DNA of 39,234 bases, from NCBI GenBank assembly GCA_002269645.1, contig NIVC01004655.1, forward strand, positions 1 through 39,234, written 5' to 3'. A program made the position numbers and the translations under genes. This DNA is from Macrostomum lignano (lineage: Eukaryota). Below, in pieces: positions 832 to 31,716 of this stretch; position 1 is the stretch's first letter; every line of letters starts with the position of its first letter. The notes under the pieces are model-generated. The model was given only the letters and a program-made list of their open reading frames with translations. It searched no databases and was not told where the DNA came from.

Positions 832-4994
<4,163 letters not shown>

Positions 4995-6738: not shown

Positions 6739-18948
<12,210 letters not shown>

Positions 18949-19980
18949 TTCTGACAAAACGGGAAACTGTCGAAGGATAAGGCAGGTGAATAGACATAAA
19001 TATTAATTAATGAAAGCGCGACAACATAATATTTCAGTTATCACGGTTTCTAAGTTAAAAGCGTATGCCACTATTTTACATAGAAACAAAGGAATATGCT
19101 CCGTTAATTTCAGAATGATTTTTAAATCTTTATAACTTTGTAAAAGCTACAAATATTTGTTCAATTTCATTTAAACCTGTTAAAGTATGTTTTTATTTTT
19201 GATATACTATCACTCGGTGTTTTTTCGACAATGTTAAGCTAAAGTAGGCCGGCACAACTTGATTATAATTGTAATACAACCGTTTTTTAGTTCTAAATTC
19301 CGTATATTTTTATGTCTGAAGGATGCATAATTCGTGATCGAAAGGTCCAACTTTTAATTTCTTACAATCAGTAATACAACAGCAGACTTATCAAAAAAGA
19401 TCACAATTAAATTTTGTGTAGATTTCTCTAAATGTATAAAAGTACTTAACACTCAACAGCCTCTTTCATTTACATCTTATCTGCTTTTGTAGCGTGAGCA
19501 TTATCTATCTTGCCGATATGAAAAAACAACATAATTTTGTAAGCAACAAGAGAAAGAACACAAACAAAAAAATCTTATTATCATGAATGTTCTCTCGAAA
19601 CAGTTCCAGCTCACTTTGACTTGAAAGTTGAAATTAGGTGCAGCTTCGGCTTAAAAAAGCTGTTAGGTCGTCAGAAACTTGTAACTCAGAATTTTAGATT
19701 TACTTCTGCTAAATTCACACACCAGAAAATTGTAATTTTCTCTAACTATTCCATTCCGTCAGATAATTTTGTCGTCTTTTTTGTTTACTTTTCAAAATAT
19801 CCGTTTGACTATATTTTTCGGAGAACAAAAAATTTCTTTTATTCAGTTTGCCTCGTGTTCGTGTAATACTAAGAAAGAGTATATTATACTTATTAATAAC
19901 AATAGATATTACAGACAGTAAATCATAATTTAAGAGATCTTTCAGTTCCGTTTTGATCTATACGCAATTTAAGTAGTAAA
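18949..19980. promoter_or_regulatory. Probable shared divergent promoter/5' region of C1orf87-like (-) and CTDNEP1 (+)
   Basis: About 1 kb between opposed start codons; AT-rich, CpG-retaining, no tandem repeats. Confidence 0.6.
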
Positions 19981-22900
19981 ATGCTTTTGAGTCAAAGGAA
20001 TGAACGAGTAGCTTGGTTTCAAGTAGGAGTCTTTGCTCTAATTAGAAACTTTTTTTTGTCTTTCTCAAAAGTATTGACATTCTTCTCTTGGATTCTTCGT
20101 AAAAAGTGTCGTGAGGTTAGTTGATAATAATTCTTTGAACAAGTGACTTGTTTTCATTGTTTTTGTTTAATGTTTTTTGATGCTTTTTGTATAATATATA
20201 TAGGGACTTTGTATGTTAGCCATTGCTGGTAGATAGATAAGCCTATAATAGTTACAGTAAATACTTATAGCATTTAATTTTAGTTTTTTTGTTGAGGCAT
20301 AGCAAAGTAGGCCTTTGAAATTTCATATTTTAAGCCTAGATACAAATTCAATAACAATGTCAATAGTTCCTAGACACTTTATCATCTTATAGGCCTAACT
20401 CTGTTATCTTTAACTTTTTGTTTAATCATCCACTTTAAACTTTAAAAGACTGGACATCTAGCCAAATAGCATGCTTTAAAGTTTGGTCAGTGTGTTAATA
20501 CCAATATTCAATTTATAGATATTGTTAAGTTCAAATATATCTAAAAACTAAGGTCAAACTTTGAGACTATAATGTCCCCACTTTCTCATTCTAAACTTGG
20601 GACTCCAAAGAGTAGTGAGTTACAACTACAAATATTGTTTTATTATAAATTAATATAGAGGTCGGACGGGATTGAAATCTTCGGGCGGGATCGGGATCGG
20701 GAATAATTTTTTTCTCGGGATCGGGATCGGGATTTCGGGAATCGGGATCAGGTCTTTTAGTGTATTGTCCATGTAAAGTTAAACAAAATTGAGAAAAGAT
20801 TGTCAAGATCAAGAAGTAAAACACAACAAAATTGATATGAAGTTTTGTAACCAACAAAGTAAATAATGTAACGAGTACAAGTTAAAGCAAAATACCTTCA
20901 AGTAATCACTAATTCTATAAATTATTTAATCAAAAGACCTGTTCCCAAATCTCGAGTTTTTTAGGGTCGGGATTCTCGTCCCGCGGGAATTCAATTTTCC
21001 TCGGGATCCCGAGATTTCGGGATCGGGATTGGGATCCCATCCGACCTCTAATATAAAATATACTTTAGAAGAAAATGAAAAGATAAATTAAAAAAGATAC
21101 AATTATTAAGGCACAAAGATAGCATTCATTATTTGCAATTGCTATCTTGCAGAATCATGCATTAAACTCACTGTACATATATTTTTTAACTATTGATATG
21201 AAACTTTCCAAAAATGAATATTTTTATTATGCCAACATTTTAGAAGTGTTTTGGCAATAAAATTCCATTGTGCAGTGTTGCAACTTAACTTTAATTGCAA
21301 TTTCCAGGGGTTTTTTTAATTTTAATAACTATTAACAATTTATGCAATTTTGAACTTTTGCACTAATGTCAATGGCAAAAATGTGTCTATTGCCAAAATT
21401 AATTACATACTCTAAGGTTCTAAAAAGAGGGGTTTGGGTTAGAAATATTTTGCTACTAAGCTACAAATATTGCAAATAAAGTGCTTTCTACCTAAAAATG
21501 ACTTGTGGATGACTTTTGTTCCAACATGTATTATGCTTAGTGCTATTTCAATTAACAATTAACAATGGAACTTTAATGCCTGAACACTTCTAAAATGTTG
21601 GCTTATTGAAAATACTCATTTTTCGAAGGTTTTATATCAATAGCTAAAAAAATGTACATATAGTGAGTTTAATGAACAATTCTGCAAGATAGCTTGCAAT
21701 TGTATGGTATTGTGTAGATATTGCTAGTGTTTTTATTTGGTAACTAAAATAAATACCTTATAAATATTTATCTTATTAGGGACTACTGAATATTTGTCCC
21801 TATATATTTTTTCATATGAGTTCAAACTAACTAAAGCTAGTATTCTAGATGGAGTTTAGGCATGATTTATATATGTTTATAGCATTAGGTTTTTATTAGA
21901 TTGTACTATTAATGATTTAAGTACAAAGGATATTTCAGAAAAAACAAACAATAAAAGTATTACACAATATATAAACCTTGTATTTATTTTAGTTACTATG
22001 TAAATAACAATAGTACTATTTATATGGTACCTTGCAATTAACAAGTACTTATCAGTTGTTAGTATTATTAAAAAATGAGATTGTTATCTTGTAATTATTT
22101 TATTCTAAACTTATAATACTGATGGGTGACATTAAATTTAATATTTTCTGGTTGACAAAGTGATTGTATCATAGTTTTGTGGACAAAAGAGCAAACGAAA
22201 TGGCAATAGACAAAACAACTGTTAACTAAGCATTGGTCTAGATGGAAGAAATATAGGGTATATATTTTCAGGATATGTATAGATAGATTTAGATATCCTT
22301 ACAGAAATGCATTTTTATCTGGTTCCTATATTTAATAATATTGGCCACTCAATAACTAAAACTTAAAAGATCATTAAAATCATAGATTTCATAGGTAGAA
22401 GGATAGAGAAATAGAAATGAATATTTATTAAACATTTAAAGCTGTTTTAAGAGAAGTCTTAAGTCCACAAGGTCAGAGACTCATCAATAGATATTTTTAT
22501 ACCACTTGCATACTATATCATTAGGGTTATAGGGGCTAATATTAATATAAATGTCTGTTTAAGAGTGATGGGTTAAAGTATTGCTGTCATTCTTTACTTT
22601 GTCAATTATTGTGGTAAATGATAGAAGAGCATCATTAAAAGTTATGAGAAGTTAAAATATATTAATTAGCTATAGATATATATATATATATATATATATA
22701 AACCACTTTTAGTATTTAGAGATATAGACTATAAGGAGAAACTTTAAATGGCTATGGAGTATGGAAATAAATATAGAAAAATTATGGTTACATTAGAACT
22801 CTACAAAACATCAATACAATGGGATAGAAAATGGAAATATAAACTGAAAAGTCAATAGAAAAATATAGGACAACAAAAATGAAGTACCAAGGTATGCTTA

Positions 22901-25061
22901 AATAAATCTTACTAAATTTGAATTTGAATATTAATCTATAAATATCTTTCCCAGATCCAGCAATACAGGACAGTCAGATATGACATTGCTCCACTGTCGC
23001 CGCATTCCAAATTGCGACTAAGTAAGTTTACTATTAATTTTTTCAATGCAATGCAATATTTTTATTGTAACTTTTGGCACAAGCAAACTGGCCCGGTGCC
23101 ACCAACTGCAGGCCGGGTCAGGCGCAAAACCCTTGTGCTGGATTTGGACGAGACTCTGATTCACTCCCAGCATGACGGCCTGGTGCAGATGGGAGGCCAG
23201 ACAAAACAGCCAGCAGACTTCATTGTTCACGTGAGTTTGAGAGTTTGAGTATGAAATGTGGAATAATAGGAGTTCAATGTGAGATGTGGAATAATGGGGA
23301 TTTCAATATGAGATGTGGAATGATGGGGATTTCAATATGAGATGTGGAATGATGGGATTTCAGTATGAGATGTGGAATGATGGGATTTCACTATGAAATG
23401 TGGAATAATGGTATTTCAATATGAATTGCGGAATAATAGGGATTTCACTATGAAATGTGGAATAATGGGATTTCAATGTGAGATGTGGAATAATGGGATT
23501 TCAATATGAGATGTGGAATAATTGGGGATTTCAATATGAGATGTGGAATAATCGGGATTTCAGTATGAGATGTGGAATAATGGGATTTCAGTATGAGGTG
23601 TGGAATAATGGGATTTCAGTATGAGATGTGGAATGATGGGATTTCAGTATGAGGTGTGGAATAATGGGATTTCAGTATGAGATGTGGAATGATGGGATTT
23701 CAGTATGAGGTGTGGAATAATGGGATTTCAGTATGAGATGTGGAATAATGCGGATTTCAGTTCGGCCGCAATCAACTATCCACCCCATTGTCCGCTTCCG
23801 CAGGTGCGCATCGACCGGCACAATGTCCGCTTCTTCGTGCGCAAGCGGCCTCACGTTGACTTCTTTCTAGACGTCGTTAGCCAGTGGTACGACCTGGTGG
23901 TGTTCACCGCTTCTCTCCAGATCTACGGCGAGGCCGTGGCCCAGCGGCTGGACAATGGCCGCCAGATTCTGAAGCGCGGCTTCTATAGGCAGGACTGCCA
24001 AGTTGACAACGGCAGCTACATCAAGAATCTGGCCGCCGTGTCGCCCGACCTGGGCTCAGTTTTTATTCTGGACAATTCTCCGGGAGCTTATCGCACTTTT
24101 CCAGGTGGGAGAGGTTGACTTTATTCTTGCTTTTTGTGTTCCCTAGTGCCTATTGCCTGCCTTCCACATTCCCCGGGTCCTCAAGCTGTGTTACCCTGCC
24201 AGATCCTCGGTTGCTGGGCCAGCCTCCCAGATCCCCAGTTGCTGAGCCAGCCTCCCAGATCCTCAGTTGCTGGGCCAGCCTCCCAGATCCTCAGTTGCTG
24301 GGCCAACCTCCCAGATCCTCAATCGCTAGGGCAGCCTCTCAGATCCTCAGTTGCTGAGCCAGCCTCTCAGATCCTCAGTTGCTAGGCCAGTCTCCCAGGT
24401 CCTCAGTTGCTGGGCCAGCCTCTCAGATCCTCAGTTGCTAGGCCAGTCTCCCAGGTCCTCAGTTGCTGGGCCAGCCTCTCAGATCCTCAGTTGCTAGGCC
24501 AGTCTCCCAGATCCTCAGTTGCTAGGGCAGCCTCTCAGATCCTCAGTTGCTGGGCCAGCCTCCCAGATCCTCAGTTGCTAGGCCAGCCTCCCAGATCCTC
24601 AGTTGCTAGGCCAGCCTCTCAAATCCTCAGTTGCTAGGCCAGCCTCTCAGATCCTCAGTTGCTAGGCCAGTCTCCCAGGTCCTAGCCTCGCCGTGAAAAA
24701 AAGCTCTAATAATTAACTAGATTCCGAGTTTATGAGTTTCAAAAGTGAGTTTCAAACTCGCGACAGGTGCCTGAGTTATTTGTTGTCATCAATCCATCTC
24801 AACCACTGAGCCAGAATCTCGCCTGTGTGTAAATTTTGTACACACACTATAAGGATCCTCGTCGCACTCATCTCATGCTACTCTTCAGTAGGCGATCTCT
24901 CTTATCCAATTCCGCCATCCGCAGAGAACGCCATCCCCATCGTGTCGTGGTTCTCGGACAGTTCGGACACGGCCCTACTGGCGCTGCTGCCGGTGCTGGA
25001 CTCGCTGCGGTTTGTCACCGACGTGCGCAGCGTGCTCAGCCGCAATCTGCACAGATCCTGA
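19981..25061 (+). CDS. CTDNEP1: CTD nuclear envelope phosphatase 1 (dullard/Nem1 family HAD phosphatase), 252 aa; exons 19981-20115, 22955-23021, 23112-23230, 23804-24104, 24925-25061
   Basis: Spliced translation [90 protein letters not shown]...[27 protein letters not shown]...[25 protein letters not shown]...[12 protein letters not shown]. Contains the DxDxT motif DLDET and a hydrophobic N-terminus. All introns are GT-AG and phases are consistent (759 nt). Confidence 0.95.
20658..21048. mobile_element. Young MITE with CGGGAT subterminal repeats in CTDNEP1 intron 1
   Basis: TIR GAGGTCGGA(C/T)GGGAT; flanked by direct repeat TAATATA (20651-20657, 21049-21055). Confidence 0.85.
21133..21700. 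mobile_element. Old, decayed foldback element in CTDNEP1 intron 1
   Basis: About 140-bp diverged inverted arms (21133-21271 vs 21561-21700), e.g. GCTATCTTGCAGAAT / ATTCTGCAAGATAGC and GCCAACATTTTAGAAGTGTT / AACACTTCTAAAATGTTGGC. Confidence 0.7.
22676..22700. repeat. (AT)n microsatellite
   Basis: Direct inspection. Confidence 0.9.
23245..23760. repeat. 28-29-bp minisatellite (GAGATGTGGAATAATGGGATTTCAGTAT) filling CTDNEP1 intron 3
   Basis: Direct inspection. Confidence 0.97.
24195..24680. repeat. 28-bp minisatellite (CAGATCCTCAGTTGCTRGGCCAGCCTCY) in CTDNEP1 intron 4
   Basis: Direct inspection. Confidence 0.97.

Positions 25062-30732: not shown

Positions 30733-31716
<984 letters not shown>

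What the first reader, a model, noticed from the sequence alone, without database searches (positions are those of the whole stretch)
19981..25061. Steep monotonic 5'-to-3' GC3 gradient inside one 5-kb gene (CTDNEP1)
Hand-counted GC3 (Met/Trp excluded) by exon: 11/42 (26%), 11/22 (50%), 26/39 (67%), 73/99 (74%), 38/43 (88%). Exon 1 uses codons as if from an AT-rich genome and exon 5 as if from a GC-rich one, yet they splice in frame into one conserved protein. Introns follow the same trend. This is the inverse of the vertebrate CpG-island pattern and implies a position-dependent mutational or conversion regime tied to distance from the TSS (mechanism is inference).
Basis: partly seen in the sequence, partly recalled or inferred. 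Interest (0 to 1): 0.75.

Follow-up and report, generated by a model that had tools for sequence, protein, structure and literature searches.

The report
Steep within-gene GC3 rise, flatworm CTDNEP1
One flatworm (Macrostomum lignano) phosphatase gene really does switch from AT-ending codons in its first exon to GC-ending codons in its last. The switch is kept in an old duplicate and absent in other animals, and it reflects both the local DNA composition and a weaker GC enrichment in 5'-most exons, but whether this holds genome-wide is untested.

Summary
The window is the whole contig NIVC01004655.1 of Macrostomum lignano, and the five-exon CTDNEP1 model equals the annotated protein. GC3 by exon is 11/42, 11/22, 26/39, 73/99 and 39/44 (trend p=6e-11). 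Four-fold sites go from 1/17 to 27/28.

It is not an assembly or annotation artefact. All three homeologous contigs show it, and exon 1 and the first intron positions are conserved in three other phyla. An old paralog, with third positions 33-60% different, keeps a weaker version (.43/.32/.40/.66/.72). Orthologs in Clonorchis, Lingula and Owenia have no gradient.

The cause looks compound:
- **Regional composition.** The gene crosses a junction between an AT-rich block without minisatellites (about 14-23 kb) and a short GC-rich block full of minisatellites. Over 26 exons of six genes, GC3 tracks flanking non-coding GC (r=.58-.68).
- **Position in the gene.** M. lignano exons usually have GC3 far above their flanks, but the 5'-most exons often do not (BRSK .20, NARS2-like .39). 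Gene Y (.79) is a counter-example.

The TSS-anchored reading is therefore partly supported. The mechanism (mutation bias, gene conversion or 5' codon selection) remains an inference, and generality is untested.

The parts
19981..20115 (+). CTDNEP1-A exon 1 (45 codons, N-terminal membrane helix). GC3 11/42 = .26, four-fold sites 1/17.
   Evidence: Homologous to the N-termini of orthologs, with a phase-0 junction conserved in Clonorchis, Lingula and Owenia.
20116..22954 (+). Intron 1, 2839 bp, GC .28, no minisatellite. Holds a MITE-like element (20644-21062) and a foldback element (21141-21693).
22955..23021 (+). Exon 2 (67 nt), GC3 .50. The exon size is conserved in Lingula, Owenia and Clonorchis.
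23112..23230 (+). Exon 3 (119 nt), GC3 .67 although its unique flanks are only .27 GC. Carries the DLDET catalytic motif.
23244..23761 (.). 28-bp minisatellite (18 copies) that fills intron 3. Intron length differs among homeologs (573/737/602 bp).
23804..24104 (+). Exon 4 (301 nt), GC3 .74. It equals three ancestral exons (72+117+112 nt) fused.
24195..24683 (.). 28-bp GC-rich minisatellite (17.5 copies) that fills intron 4. Intron length is 820/1072/820 bp among homeologs.
24925..25061 (+). Exon 5 with the TGA stop, GC3 39/44 = .89, four-fold sites 27/28.
14000..22950 (.). AT-rich block (about .26-.41 GC per kb) without minisatellites. It covers the divergent intergenic region, exon 1 and intron 1.
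22969..23096 (.). Interval in which the relationship among the three homeologous contigs switches. To the left the window copy is the odd one; to the right the window is identical to L002 and L001 is about 4% different. It coincides with the AT-to-GC junction.
4857..4994 (-). Comparator: first coding exon of the neighbouring BRSK/SAD kinase gene, GC3 9/44 = .20 in an AT-rich block. Its exons 2 and 3 are .66 and .65.
6742..6906 (-). Comparator: presumed last exon of gene Y (read off ORFs by eye, not validated), GC3 .76 inside the same AT-rich block (flanks .28-.30).

Best explanation
The gradient is a real, maintained feature specific to M. lignano, and it has two superimposed components.

(1) Where the exon sits. 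CTDNEP1-A spans a sharp junction between two kinds of DNA. One is an AT-rich block (about 30% GC) without minisatellites, holding the intergenic DNA, exon 1, the 2.8-kb intron 1 and exon 2. The other is a 2-kb GC-richer block full of minisatellites, holding exons 3-5. Silent sites follow the local non-adaptive substitution regime of the surrounding DNA.

(2) Which exon it is. M. lignano exons normally carry GC3 well above their flanks (CDS 58.7% GC against 45.9% for the genome), but this boost is weak or missing in many 5'-most coding exons.

Shown: the counts, their persistence in the paralog, their absence in orthologs, the correlation with flanking GC, and the smaller excess in first exons. 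Inferred: the two blocks differ in mutation bias and/or GC-biased gene conversion, with the minisatellite-rich 3' block being the recombination-active one.
For: - GC3 and four-fold counts, and the trend tests.
- The same profile in three independent contigs, including a 1.4-Mb scaffold.
- Paralog B has the same exon sizes (67/119/301/134 nt), a 3.1-kb AT-rich intron 1, and GC3 of .43/.32/.40/.66/.72. Third positions of identical amino acids differ between A and B at 33-60%, so the shared profile is maintained rather than inherited.
- Orthologs show no rise: Clonorchis .53/.50/.44/.45/.62/.42, Lingula .50/.36/.40/.12/.49/.30/.54, Owenia .40/.41/.18/.25/.35/.41/.41.
- Over 26 exons of 6 genes, GC3 against flanking non-coding GC gives r=.58 (p=.002), or r=.68 (p=3e-4) without tandem repeats, with slope about 1.25.
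- The GC3 excess over flanks is lower in first exons (MWU p=.046). In a per-codon logistic model with gene effects, both flank GC and first-exon status stay significant, also when both CTDNEP1 paralogs are excluded.
- Minisatellites cover 0.9% of AT-rich kilobases against 24% of kilobases with GC>=.42.
- Polarised changes among homeologs give GC*=.33 in AT-rich DNA (current .30) and .48 in GC-rich DNA (current .52).
- Published context: M. lignano has the most GC-rich CDS among 22 flatworms (PMC6739440). A GC3-to-intron-GC correlation is the standard signature of neutral substitution patterns (bioRxiv 10.1101/2024.07.22.604600).
Against: - The sample is small (six multi-exon genes from two loci), and two of the genes are paralogs.
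- Several exon models (NLK, gene Y) were read off ORFs by eye.
- The per-codon regression is pseudo-replicated. The real n is 26 exons, and the first-exon test is only p=.046.
- Exon 3 (GC3 .67) and BRSK exon 2 (.66) sit in flanks of .27-.33 GC, so regional GC alone does not explain the rise.
- The polarised-substitution test has only 15-45 events per class and cannot separate the two regimes statistically.
- Introns 3 and 4 are single minisatellites, so their GC is not independent evidence.
- No recombination, polymorphism or expression data were available.
Confidence: 0.5

Rival explanations
1. One reading: a genome-wide regime anchored at the TSS, either transcription-associated mutation or a 5'->3' rising recombination/conversion gradient, makes silent sites AT-rich near gene starts and GC-rich downstream. 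Local composition is then a consequence and not a cause.
For: - The lowest GC3 is in the 5'-most coding exon(s) in CTDNEP1-A (.26), BRSK (.20) and NARS2-like (.39). The three 5' exons of CTDNEP1-B (.43/.32/.40) and of NLK (.50/.41/.43) are below their later exons.
- In one and the same AT-rich block, a first exon has GC3 .20 and a last exon .76.
- Both old paralogs keep the polarity.
- Intron 1 has a G>C skew of +.12 on the coding strand, against -.07 upstream.
Against: - Gene Y's first exon has GC3 .79.
- NARS2-like falls again after exon 2 (.70.58.49) in step with local GC.
- The AT-rich block extends 6 kb upstream of the ATG and ends about 1.3-2.7 kb short of gene Y's annotated start.
- Flank GC explains more than position does.
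- TSS positions are not known here. Only ATG positions were used.
Confidence: 0.3
2. Selection on the first codons: AT-ending or rare codons are favoured near the start, for weak mRNA structure at initiation, a translational ramp, or co-translational membrane insertion of the N-terminal helix.
For: - GC3 is lowest in the very first 19 codons (.16) and rises over the next ones.
- Several unrelated genes have low GC3 in the first 45-90 codons.
Against: - The upstream DNA and intron 1 are just as AT-rich (.28-.30), so no selection is needed to explain exon 1.
- The rise continues beyond codon 100 and from exon 3 to exon 5 (trend p=6e-4 without exon 1).
- Orthologs encoding the same N-terminal helix show no dip.
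- First- and second-position GC is also low in exon 1 (.38/.36), which fits a mutational pull.
Confidence: 0.12
3. Artefact: a misassembly at the compositional boundary, or a wrongly attached exon 1.
For: - The relationship among the three contigs switches exactly at 22969-23096.
- 36% of the Mlig_3_7 assembly length lies in scaffolds that are chimeric between subgenomes (PMC10733133).
Against: - A switch between homeologous copies cannot create the pattern, because all three contigs and the three paralog contigs have the same layout.
- Exon 1 is homologous to ortholog N-termini, and the junction phase and position are conserved across phyla.
- Annotated proteins from two independent annotations join exon 1 to exon 2 (P0199/P0001 and P0200).
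- The Mlig_3_7 annotation is transcriptome-based (PMC5730564).
Confidence: 0.03

Closest known systems
5'->3' GC3 gradients in plant genes (grasses, Arabidopsis; PMC4684703, PMC4316631, PMC5460877)
   Same: Both show a steep change of GC3 from exon to exon within single genes. In plants it is accompanied by intron composition and attributed to a recombination/gBGC gradient rather than to translation.
   Different: The polarity is opposite: plants fall from a GC-rich 5' end, while this gene rises from an AT-rich 5' end. The plant pattern is shown genome-wide, whereas here it rests on one gene, its paralog and four neighbours. No recombination data exist for M. lignano.
Regional (isochore-like) control of codon usage: GC3 tracks intron/flank GC (mammals, birds, Hymenoptera; bioRxiv 10.1101/2024.07.22.604600, PMC5576983)
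   Same: GC3 correlates with neighbouring non-coding GC with a slope above 1, which fits a neutral substitution pattern.
   Different: The scale here is 2-9 kb with a junction inside one gene, not tens to hundreds of kb. The cited survey reports little change of intron composition along genes outside vertebrates.
Reduced codon bias at the 5' end of coding sequences / translational ramp (from my own knowledge: described in bacteria, yeast and Drosophila)
   Same: The first tens of codons use fewer of the species' usual (GC-ending) codons.
   Different: Here the effect is far larger (.16-.26 against .8-.9), spans more than 100 codons, and is mirrored by the non-coding DNA.
Vertebrate CpG-island promoters with GC-rich first exons (PMC7181179)
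   Same: The composition anomaly is centred on the gene's 5' end.
   Different: The sign is opposite. CpG o/e is uninformative here once the minisatellites are removed.

Membership tests
CTDNEP1/Dullard (FCP/SCP-type HAD phosphatase) | NIF/FCP1-homology domain | tested here: met
   Pfam PF03031, E=2.5e-46, residues 73-242, full profile.
CTDNEP1/Dullard (FCP/SCP-type HAD phosphatase) | Closest solved relative is CTDNEP1 rather than SCP1 or TIM50. DxDx(T/V) motif and an N-terminal hydrophobic helix are present. | tested here: met
   8UJL (CTDNEP1-NEP1R1) at E=3e-89 against SCP1 at 4e-35. DLDET is at residues 78-82. The N-terminus aligns with orthologs at 60-68% identity overall.
Plant-type intragenic GC3 gradient (gBGC from TSS-proximal recombination) | GC3 declines from 5' to 3' | tested here: not met
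   GC3 rises from .26 to .89.
Plant-type intragenic GC3 gradient (gBGC from TSS-proximal recombination) | The pattern is genome-wide and linked to recombination hot spots | not testable with these tools
   Only 6 multi-exon genes could be reached. There is no recombination map.
Isochore-like regional composition | GC3 correlates with flanking non-coding GC | tested here: met
   r=.58 (p=.002), or r=.68 without tandem repeats, over 26 exons.
Isochore-like regional composition | Domains far longer than a gene (>100 kb) | tested here: not met
   The blocks are 2-9 kb, and the junction lies within exon 2 to intron 2.
5' codon ramp / start-proximal structure avoidance | The effect is confined to roughly the first 10-50 codons and to coding sequence | tested here: not met
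   The rise continues to exon 5 (p=6e-4 without exon 1). Upstream DNA and intron 1 are equally AT-rich.
CpG-island-type promoter | GC- and CpG-rich 5' end | tested here: not met
   The 5' end has GC .28-.30. CpG o/e is .80 in exons 1-2 and .44 in intron 1.

The most novel reading that the evidence does not exclude
M. lignano genes in general may carry a 5'->3' rising gradient of silent-site GC, the reverse of plants and vertebrates. The proposed cause is that gene bodies rich in minisatellites are hot for recombination and GC-biased gene conversion, while promoter-proximal DNA (intergenic region, first exon, first intron) is cold and decays to an AT-rich mutational equilibrium. The haplotype switch at exon 2/intron 2 in both paralogous loci would then mark the 5' edge of such a hot zone.
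Probability: 0.22. Interest if true: 0.72.

Novelty: new variant of a known kind. Interest (0 to 1): 0.48.

Why it matters
Intragenic composition gradients are one of the few handles on where recombination-linked gene conversion or transcription-linked mutation acts within genes. All well-studied cases (grasses, vertebrates) are GC-rich at the 5' end. A reversed, kilobase-scale gradient in a flatworm would have three consequences if it is general:
- It would give a contrasting system in which to test gBGC against mutation and selection models.
- It would affect codon optimisation and promoter/first-exon design for M. lignano transgenesis.
- It would warn against using whole-gene GC3 or codon-bias indices in this species.

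As it stands, it is one well-documented locus with partial support from its neighbours.

Tried and rejected
- **Homolog search for gene Y.** A search with the large exon of gene Y returned nothing, so gene Y exons were read off ORFs and are approximate.
- **Look-ups that failed.** P0002 and my 488-aa NARS2-like model were not on record. This ended the attempt to walk along the scaffolds for more M. lignano genes.
- **Six-frame Pfam scan.** A scan of the whole window was prepared but dropped as too costly for the expected gain. The annotation calls no gene in 25-35 kb.
- **Translated PDB search.** NARS2-like exons were then fixed by anchor peptides plus the 488-aa length constraint.
- **Polarising substitutions.** Using the three homeologs is underpowered. 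In 23.1-27.1 kb only two distinct haplotypes exist, so the GC-rich part of this gene cannot be polarised at all.
- **CpG o/e.** An apparent depletion (.52) in the 3' block came from the minisatellite units. Without them it is .88-.95, so the methylation idea was dropped as untestable here.
- **PRMT as a single-exon control.** The gene is not clean, because its annotated CDS has no ATG and its first ~70 codons may be non-coding.
- **AT-rich block built from shared repeats.** Rejected, because only exons align between the A and B loci.
- **Literature.** Searches found no description of an intragenic gradient or of gBGC in Macrostomum.
Full report
**What the sequence is.** The window is the complete 39,234-bp contig NIVC01004655.1 of the Macrostomum lignano assembly Mlig_3_7. 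Locus L003, fetched with the annotated protein P0199, is window 9981-35061 of a contig of exactly this length. The five-exon model is 19981-20115, 22955-23021, 23112-23230, 23804-24104 and 24925-25061, all with GT/AG borders. It translates to 252 aa identical to P0199 (PAA46911.1/PAA61352.1). The protein has a full NIF/FCP1-homology domain (E=2.5e-46). Its best solved relative is human CTDNEP1 in complex with NEP1R1 (8UJL, E=3e-89). It shares 60-68% identity with CTDNEP1 of many phyla. The gene name is therefore right.

**The observation.** GC3 without Met/Trp is 11/42, 11/22, 26/39, 73/99 and 39/44. Four-fold degenerate sites are 1/17, 5/10, 12/19, 37/51 and 27/28. Heterogeneity has p=6e-9. 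The Cochran-Armitage trend has p=6e-11, and still p=6e-4 when exon 1 is left out. In 21-codon bins GC3 climbs from .16 to about .8 within the first ~110 codons and then stays at .75-.9 with one dip, so the curve saturates. Introns have GC .28.37.38 and .54, but introns 3 and 4 are almost entirely single 28-bp minisatellites. Unique non-coding DNA is .25-.34 GC from 18.5 to 23.0 kb.42-.44 from 24.5 to 26.0 kb, and back to .34-.36 beyond 26 kb.

**Not an artefact.** M. lignano carries three homeologous subgenomes (PMC10733133). All three copies of the locus are in the assembly: the window, L001 on a 1.4-Mb scaffold, and L002 on a 68-kb contig. Each shows the same exon layout and the same GC3 series (.26-.29/.45-.50/.64-.67/.74-.76/.86-.89).
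- Exon 1 is a true ancestral exon. It aligns with the N-terminal helix of orthologs.
- The phase-0 junction after exon 1 and the 67-nt and 119-nt exons that follow are conserved in Lingula and Owenia (in Clonorchis the 119-nt exon is fused with the next, 191 nt).
- Two independent annotations join exon 1 to exon 2 (P0199/P0001 from NCBI and P0200 from UniProt).
- The Mlig_3_7 gene models are transcriptome-based (PMC5730564).

**Persistence and specificity.** An older paralog, CTDNEP1-B, is present in three copies (L004-L006). Its annotated proteins are 5'-partial. I found its missing first exon 3.1 kb upstream (L005 6714-6842, MGMKHNKF...KKQCHQ, GT donor, phase 0). B has the same exon sizes (67/119/301/134 nt), an AT-rich intron 1 (.30) and GC-richer 3' introns filled with minisatellites (.46-.52). 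Its gradient is weaker but has the same direction.43/.32/.40/.66/.72. Between A and B, third positions of identical amino acids differ at 33-60%, so synonymous sites have largely turned over. The common profile is therefore maintained at both loci rather than inherited as sequence. In contrast, Clonorchis sinensis, Lingula anatina and Owenia fusiformis show no rise. Their first exons have GC3 .53.50 and .40, at or above the gene means. The gradient is thus a property of the M. lignano genome and not of the CTDNEP1 coding sequence.

**Regional component.** The window is a mosaic. The AT-rich blocks lie at 4.0-7.4, 14-23 and 25.5-27 kb and carry foldback/MITE-like elements. Minisatellites with a period of at least 8 bp cover only 0.9% of the kilobases whose unique DNA is below .36 GC. 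They cover 24% of the kilobases at or above .42 GC. CTDNEP1-A crosses such a junction within exon 2 to intron 2. I modelled six multi-exon genes from the two loci: CTDNEP1-A and -B, a BRSK/SAD kinase, a 500-aa gene Y, an NLK-type kinase and a NARS2-like tRNA synthetase. Over their 26 exons, GC3 correlates with the GC of the 300 bp of non-coding DNA on each side. The correlation is r=.58 (p=.002), or r=.68 (p=3e-4) with tandem repeats masked, with slope about 1.25. The NARS2-like gene illustrates this: GC3 is .39/.70/.58/.49 while local non-coding GC goes up and down again. Gene Y begins in 52%-GC DNA and its first exon has GC3 .79. The AT-rich block also extends 6 kb upstream of the CTDNEP1 ATG, so it is not anchored at the gene start.

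**Positional component.** Regional GC is not the whole story. Most exons have GC3 far above their flanks. Examples are exon 3 of CTDNEP1-A (.66 against .27), BRSK exon 2 (.66 against .33) and the last exon of gene Y (.76 against .28-.30). This fits the species-wide GC-rich coding DNA (CDS 58.7% against genome 45.9%, PMC6739440). The boost is small or absent in several 5'-most coding exons: CTDNEP1-A -.02, BRSK -.07, NARS2-like -.09 and CTDNEP1-B +.14, against +.26 and +.27 in NLK and gene Y. The mean is +.08 for first exons and +.24 for later ones (Mann-Whitney p=.046). BRSK exon 1 (.20) and gene Y's last exon (.76) lie in the same AT-rich block. A per-codon logistic model with gene effects keeps both predictors. 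Flank GC given position has chi-square 28-36, and first exon given flank GC has chi-square 18.6. This also holds without the two CTDNEP1 genes. These p-values are inflated, because the covariates vary by exon (n=26).

**Mechanism: what could and could not be tested.**
- *Polarised changes.* Changes among the three homeologs in both loci give GC*=.33 in AT-rich DNA (current .30) and .48 in GC-rich DNA (current .52). This is consistent with each block being near its own equilibrium, but it rests on only 45 and 15 W<->S events.
- *Haplotype switch.* The relationship among the contigs is mosaic. From about 18.4 to 22,969 the window copy is the odd one. From 23,096 to about 27.1 kb the window and L002 are virtually identical and L001 differs by about 4%. 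From 28.3 kb on, the window matches L001. The first switch falls in exon 2/intron 2, exactly at the compositional junction. In the B locus an identity tract also ends at exon 2/intron 2 (9944-10028), although there the evidence is thinner. This could mark a recombination or conversion boundary next to hypervariable minisatellites. It could equally be assembly chimerism, which affects 36% of this assembly by length (PMC10733133).
- *CpG o/e.* It is uninformative once the minisatellites are removed.

**Comparison with what is known.** The finding resembles the intragenic GC3 gradients of plants in form but has the opposite polarity. It resembles isochore-type regional control in the link between GC3 and flank GC, but on a kilobase scale. 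It resembles the familiar 5' dip in codon bias, but it is much larger and is shared with non-coding DNA. A recent survey of 257 animal species reports little change of intron composition along genes outside vertebrates and apparently includes no flatworm (bioRxiv 10.1101/2024.07.22.604600). I found no paper that describes such a gradient, or gBGC, in Macrostomum.

**Verdict.** There is a maintained, position-related regime specific to M. lignano. The best current description is a compositional junction inside the gene plus a weaker GC3 boost in 5'-most exons, rather than a simple function of distance from the TSS. Generality and mechanism need the genome-wide and population analyses listed under next steps.

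Noticed in passing
window 15.8-33 kb against L001 and L002; L004-L006: The three homeologous contigs form a mosaic of identity tracts: window=L001 at 10.5-14 and 27.9-33 kb, window=L002 at 23.1-27.1 kb, and three distinct haplotypes at 15.8-23.0 kb. In both the A and B loci one switch maps to exon 2/intron 2 of CTDNEP1. This may be real recombination or conversion between subgenomes, or it may be assembly chimerism.
   Followed up: partly
window 24071-24073 (codon 197); L001 copy: The L001 homeolog (P0001, and also P0200 from another assembly) has AAT->TAT, which changes N197 to Y in the conserved ILDNSPGAY (DNSP) motif of the HAD phosphatase fold. One of the three copies may be functionally impaired.
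   Followed up: partly
window 23804-24104; L008 and L009 exons 4-6: M. lignano exon 4 (301 nt, in both paralogs) equals the three ancestral exons of 72+117+112 nt seen in Lingula and Owenia. Two introns in the 3' half were therefore lost before the A/B duplication. Clonorchis has fused a different pair (119+72).
   Followed up: partly
L005 6714-6842 (L004 6715-6843, L006 6313-6441): An unannotated first coding exon of the paralog CTDNEP1-B lies 3.1 kb upstream of exon 2. The NCBI proteins PAA65598/PAA91609/PAA91660 are 5'-partial for lack of it.
   Followed up: yes
L005 12294-15672 (also L004 and L006): CTDNEP1-B, a PRMT-like single-exon gene and a NARS2-like tRNA-synthetase gene lie on the same strand about 1.07 kb apart. 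The annotated PRMT CDS has no ATG, and a UniProt model (P0203) reads through from CTDNEP1-B into PRMT. The cluster may be an SL-trans-spliced operon.
   Followed up: no
window 23244-23761, 24195-24683; L004-L006 introns 3 and 4: Introns 3 and 4 hold unrelated minisatellites in both old paralogs, and the arrays differ in length among homeologs (intron 3: 573/737/602 bp; intron 4: 820/1072/820 bp). The same introns seem repeatedly prone to array formation.
   Followed up: partly
window 15016-15715; 21141-21693; 20644-21062: There is a 700-bp foldback with 260-nt arms that are 97% complementary in the intergenic AT-rich block. Intron 1 holds a 553-bp foldback (arms about 85% complementary) and a MITE-like element with 36-nt terminal inverted repeats around GGGATCGGGA-type repeats.
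   Followed up: partly
window 6742-11301 (-), L001 1-2753: Gene Y is annotated as 500 aa on this contig but 604 aa on the homeolog. It has no Pfam hit and no detectable homolog when searched with its 255-aa Gly/Pro-rich exon (7393-8160). Its GC-rich exons (GC3 .67-.79) include one inside an AT-rich block.
   Followed up: partly
window 4857-4994 (-): The N-terminus encoded by BRSK exon 1 is an Asn/Lys-rich low-complexity stretch ([18 protein letters not shown]) that is absent from orthologs. The AT pressure appears to shape the protein sequence as well. In CTDNEP1 exon 1, GC1 and GC2 are only .38 and .36.
   Followed up: no
window 6928-7383 and 30734-31468: Two very long tetranucleotide microsatellites are present: (TAAC)114, probably in an intron of gene Y, and (TAGA)186.
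   Followed up: no
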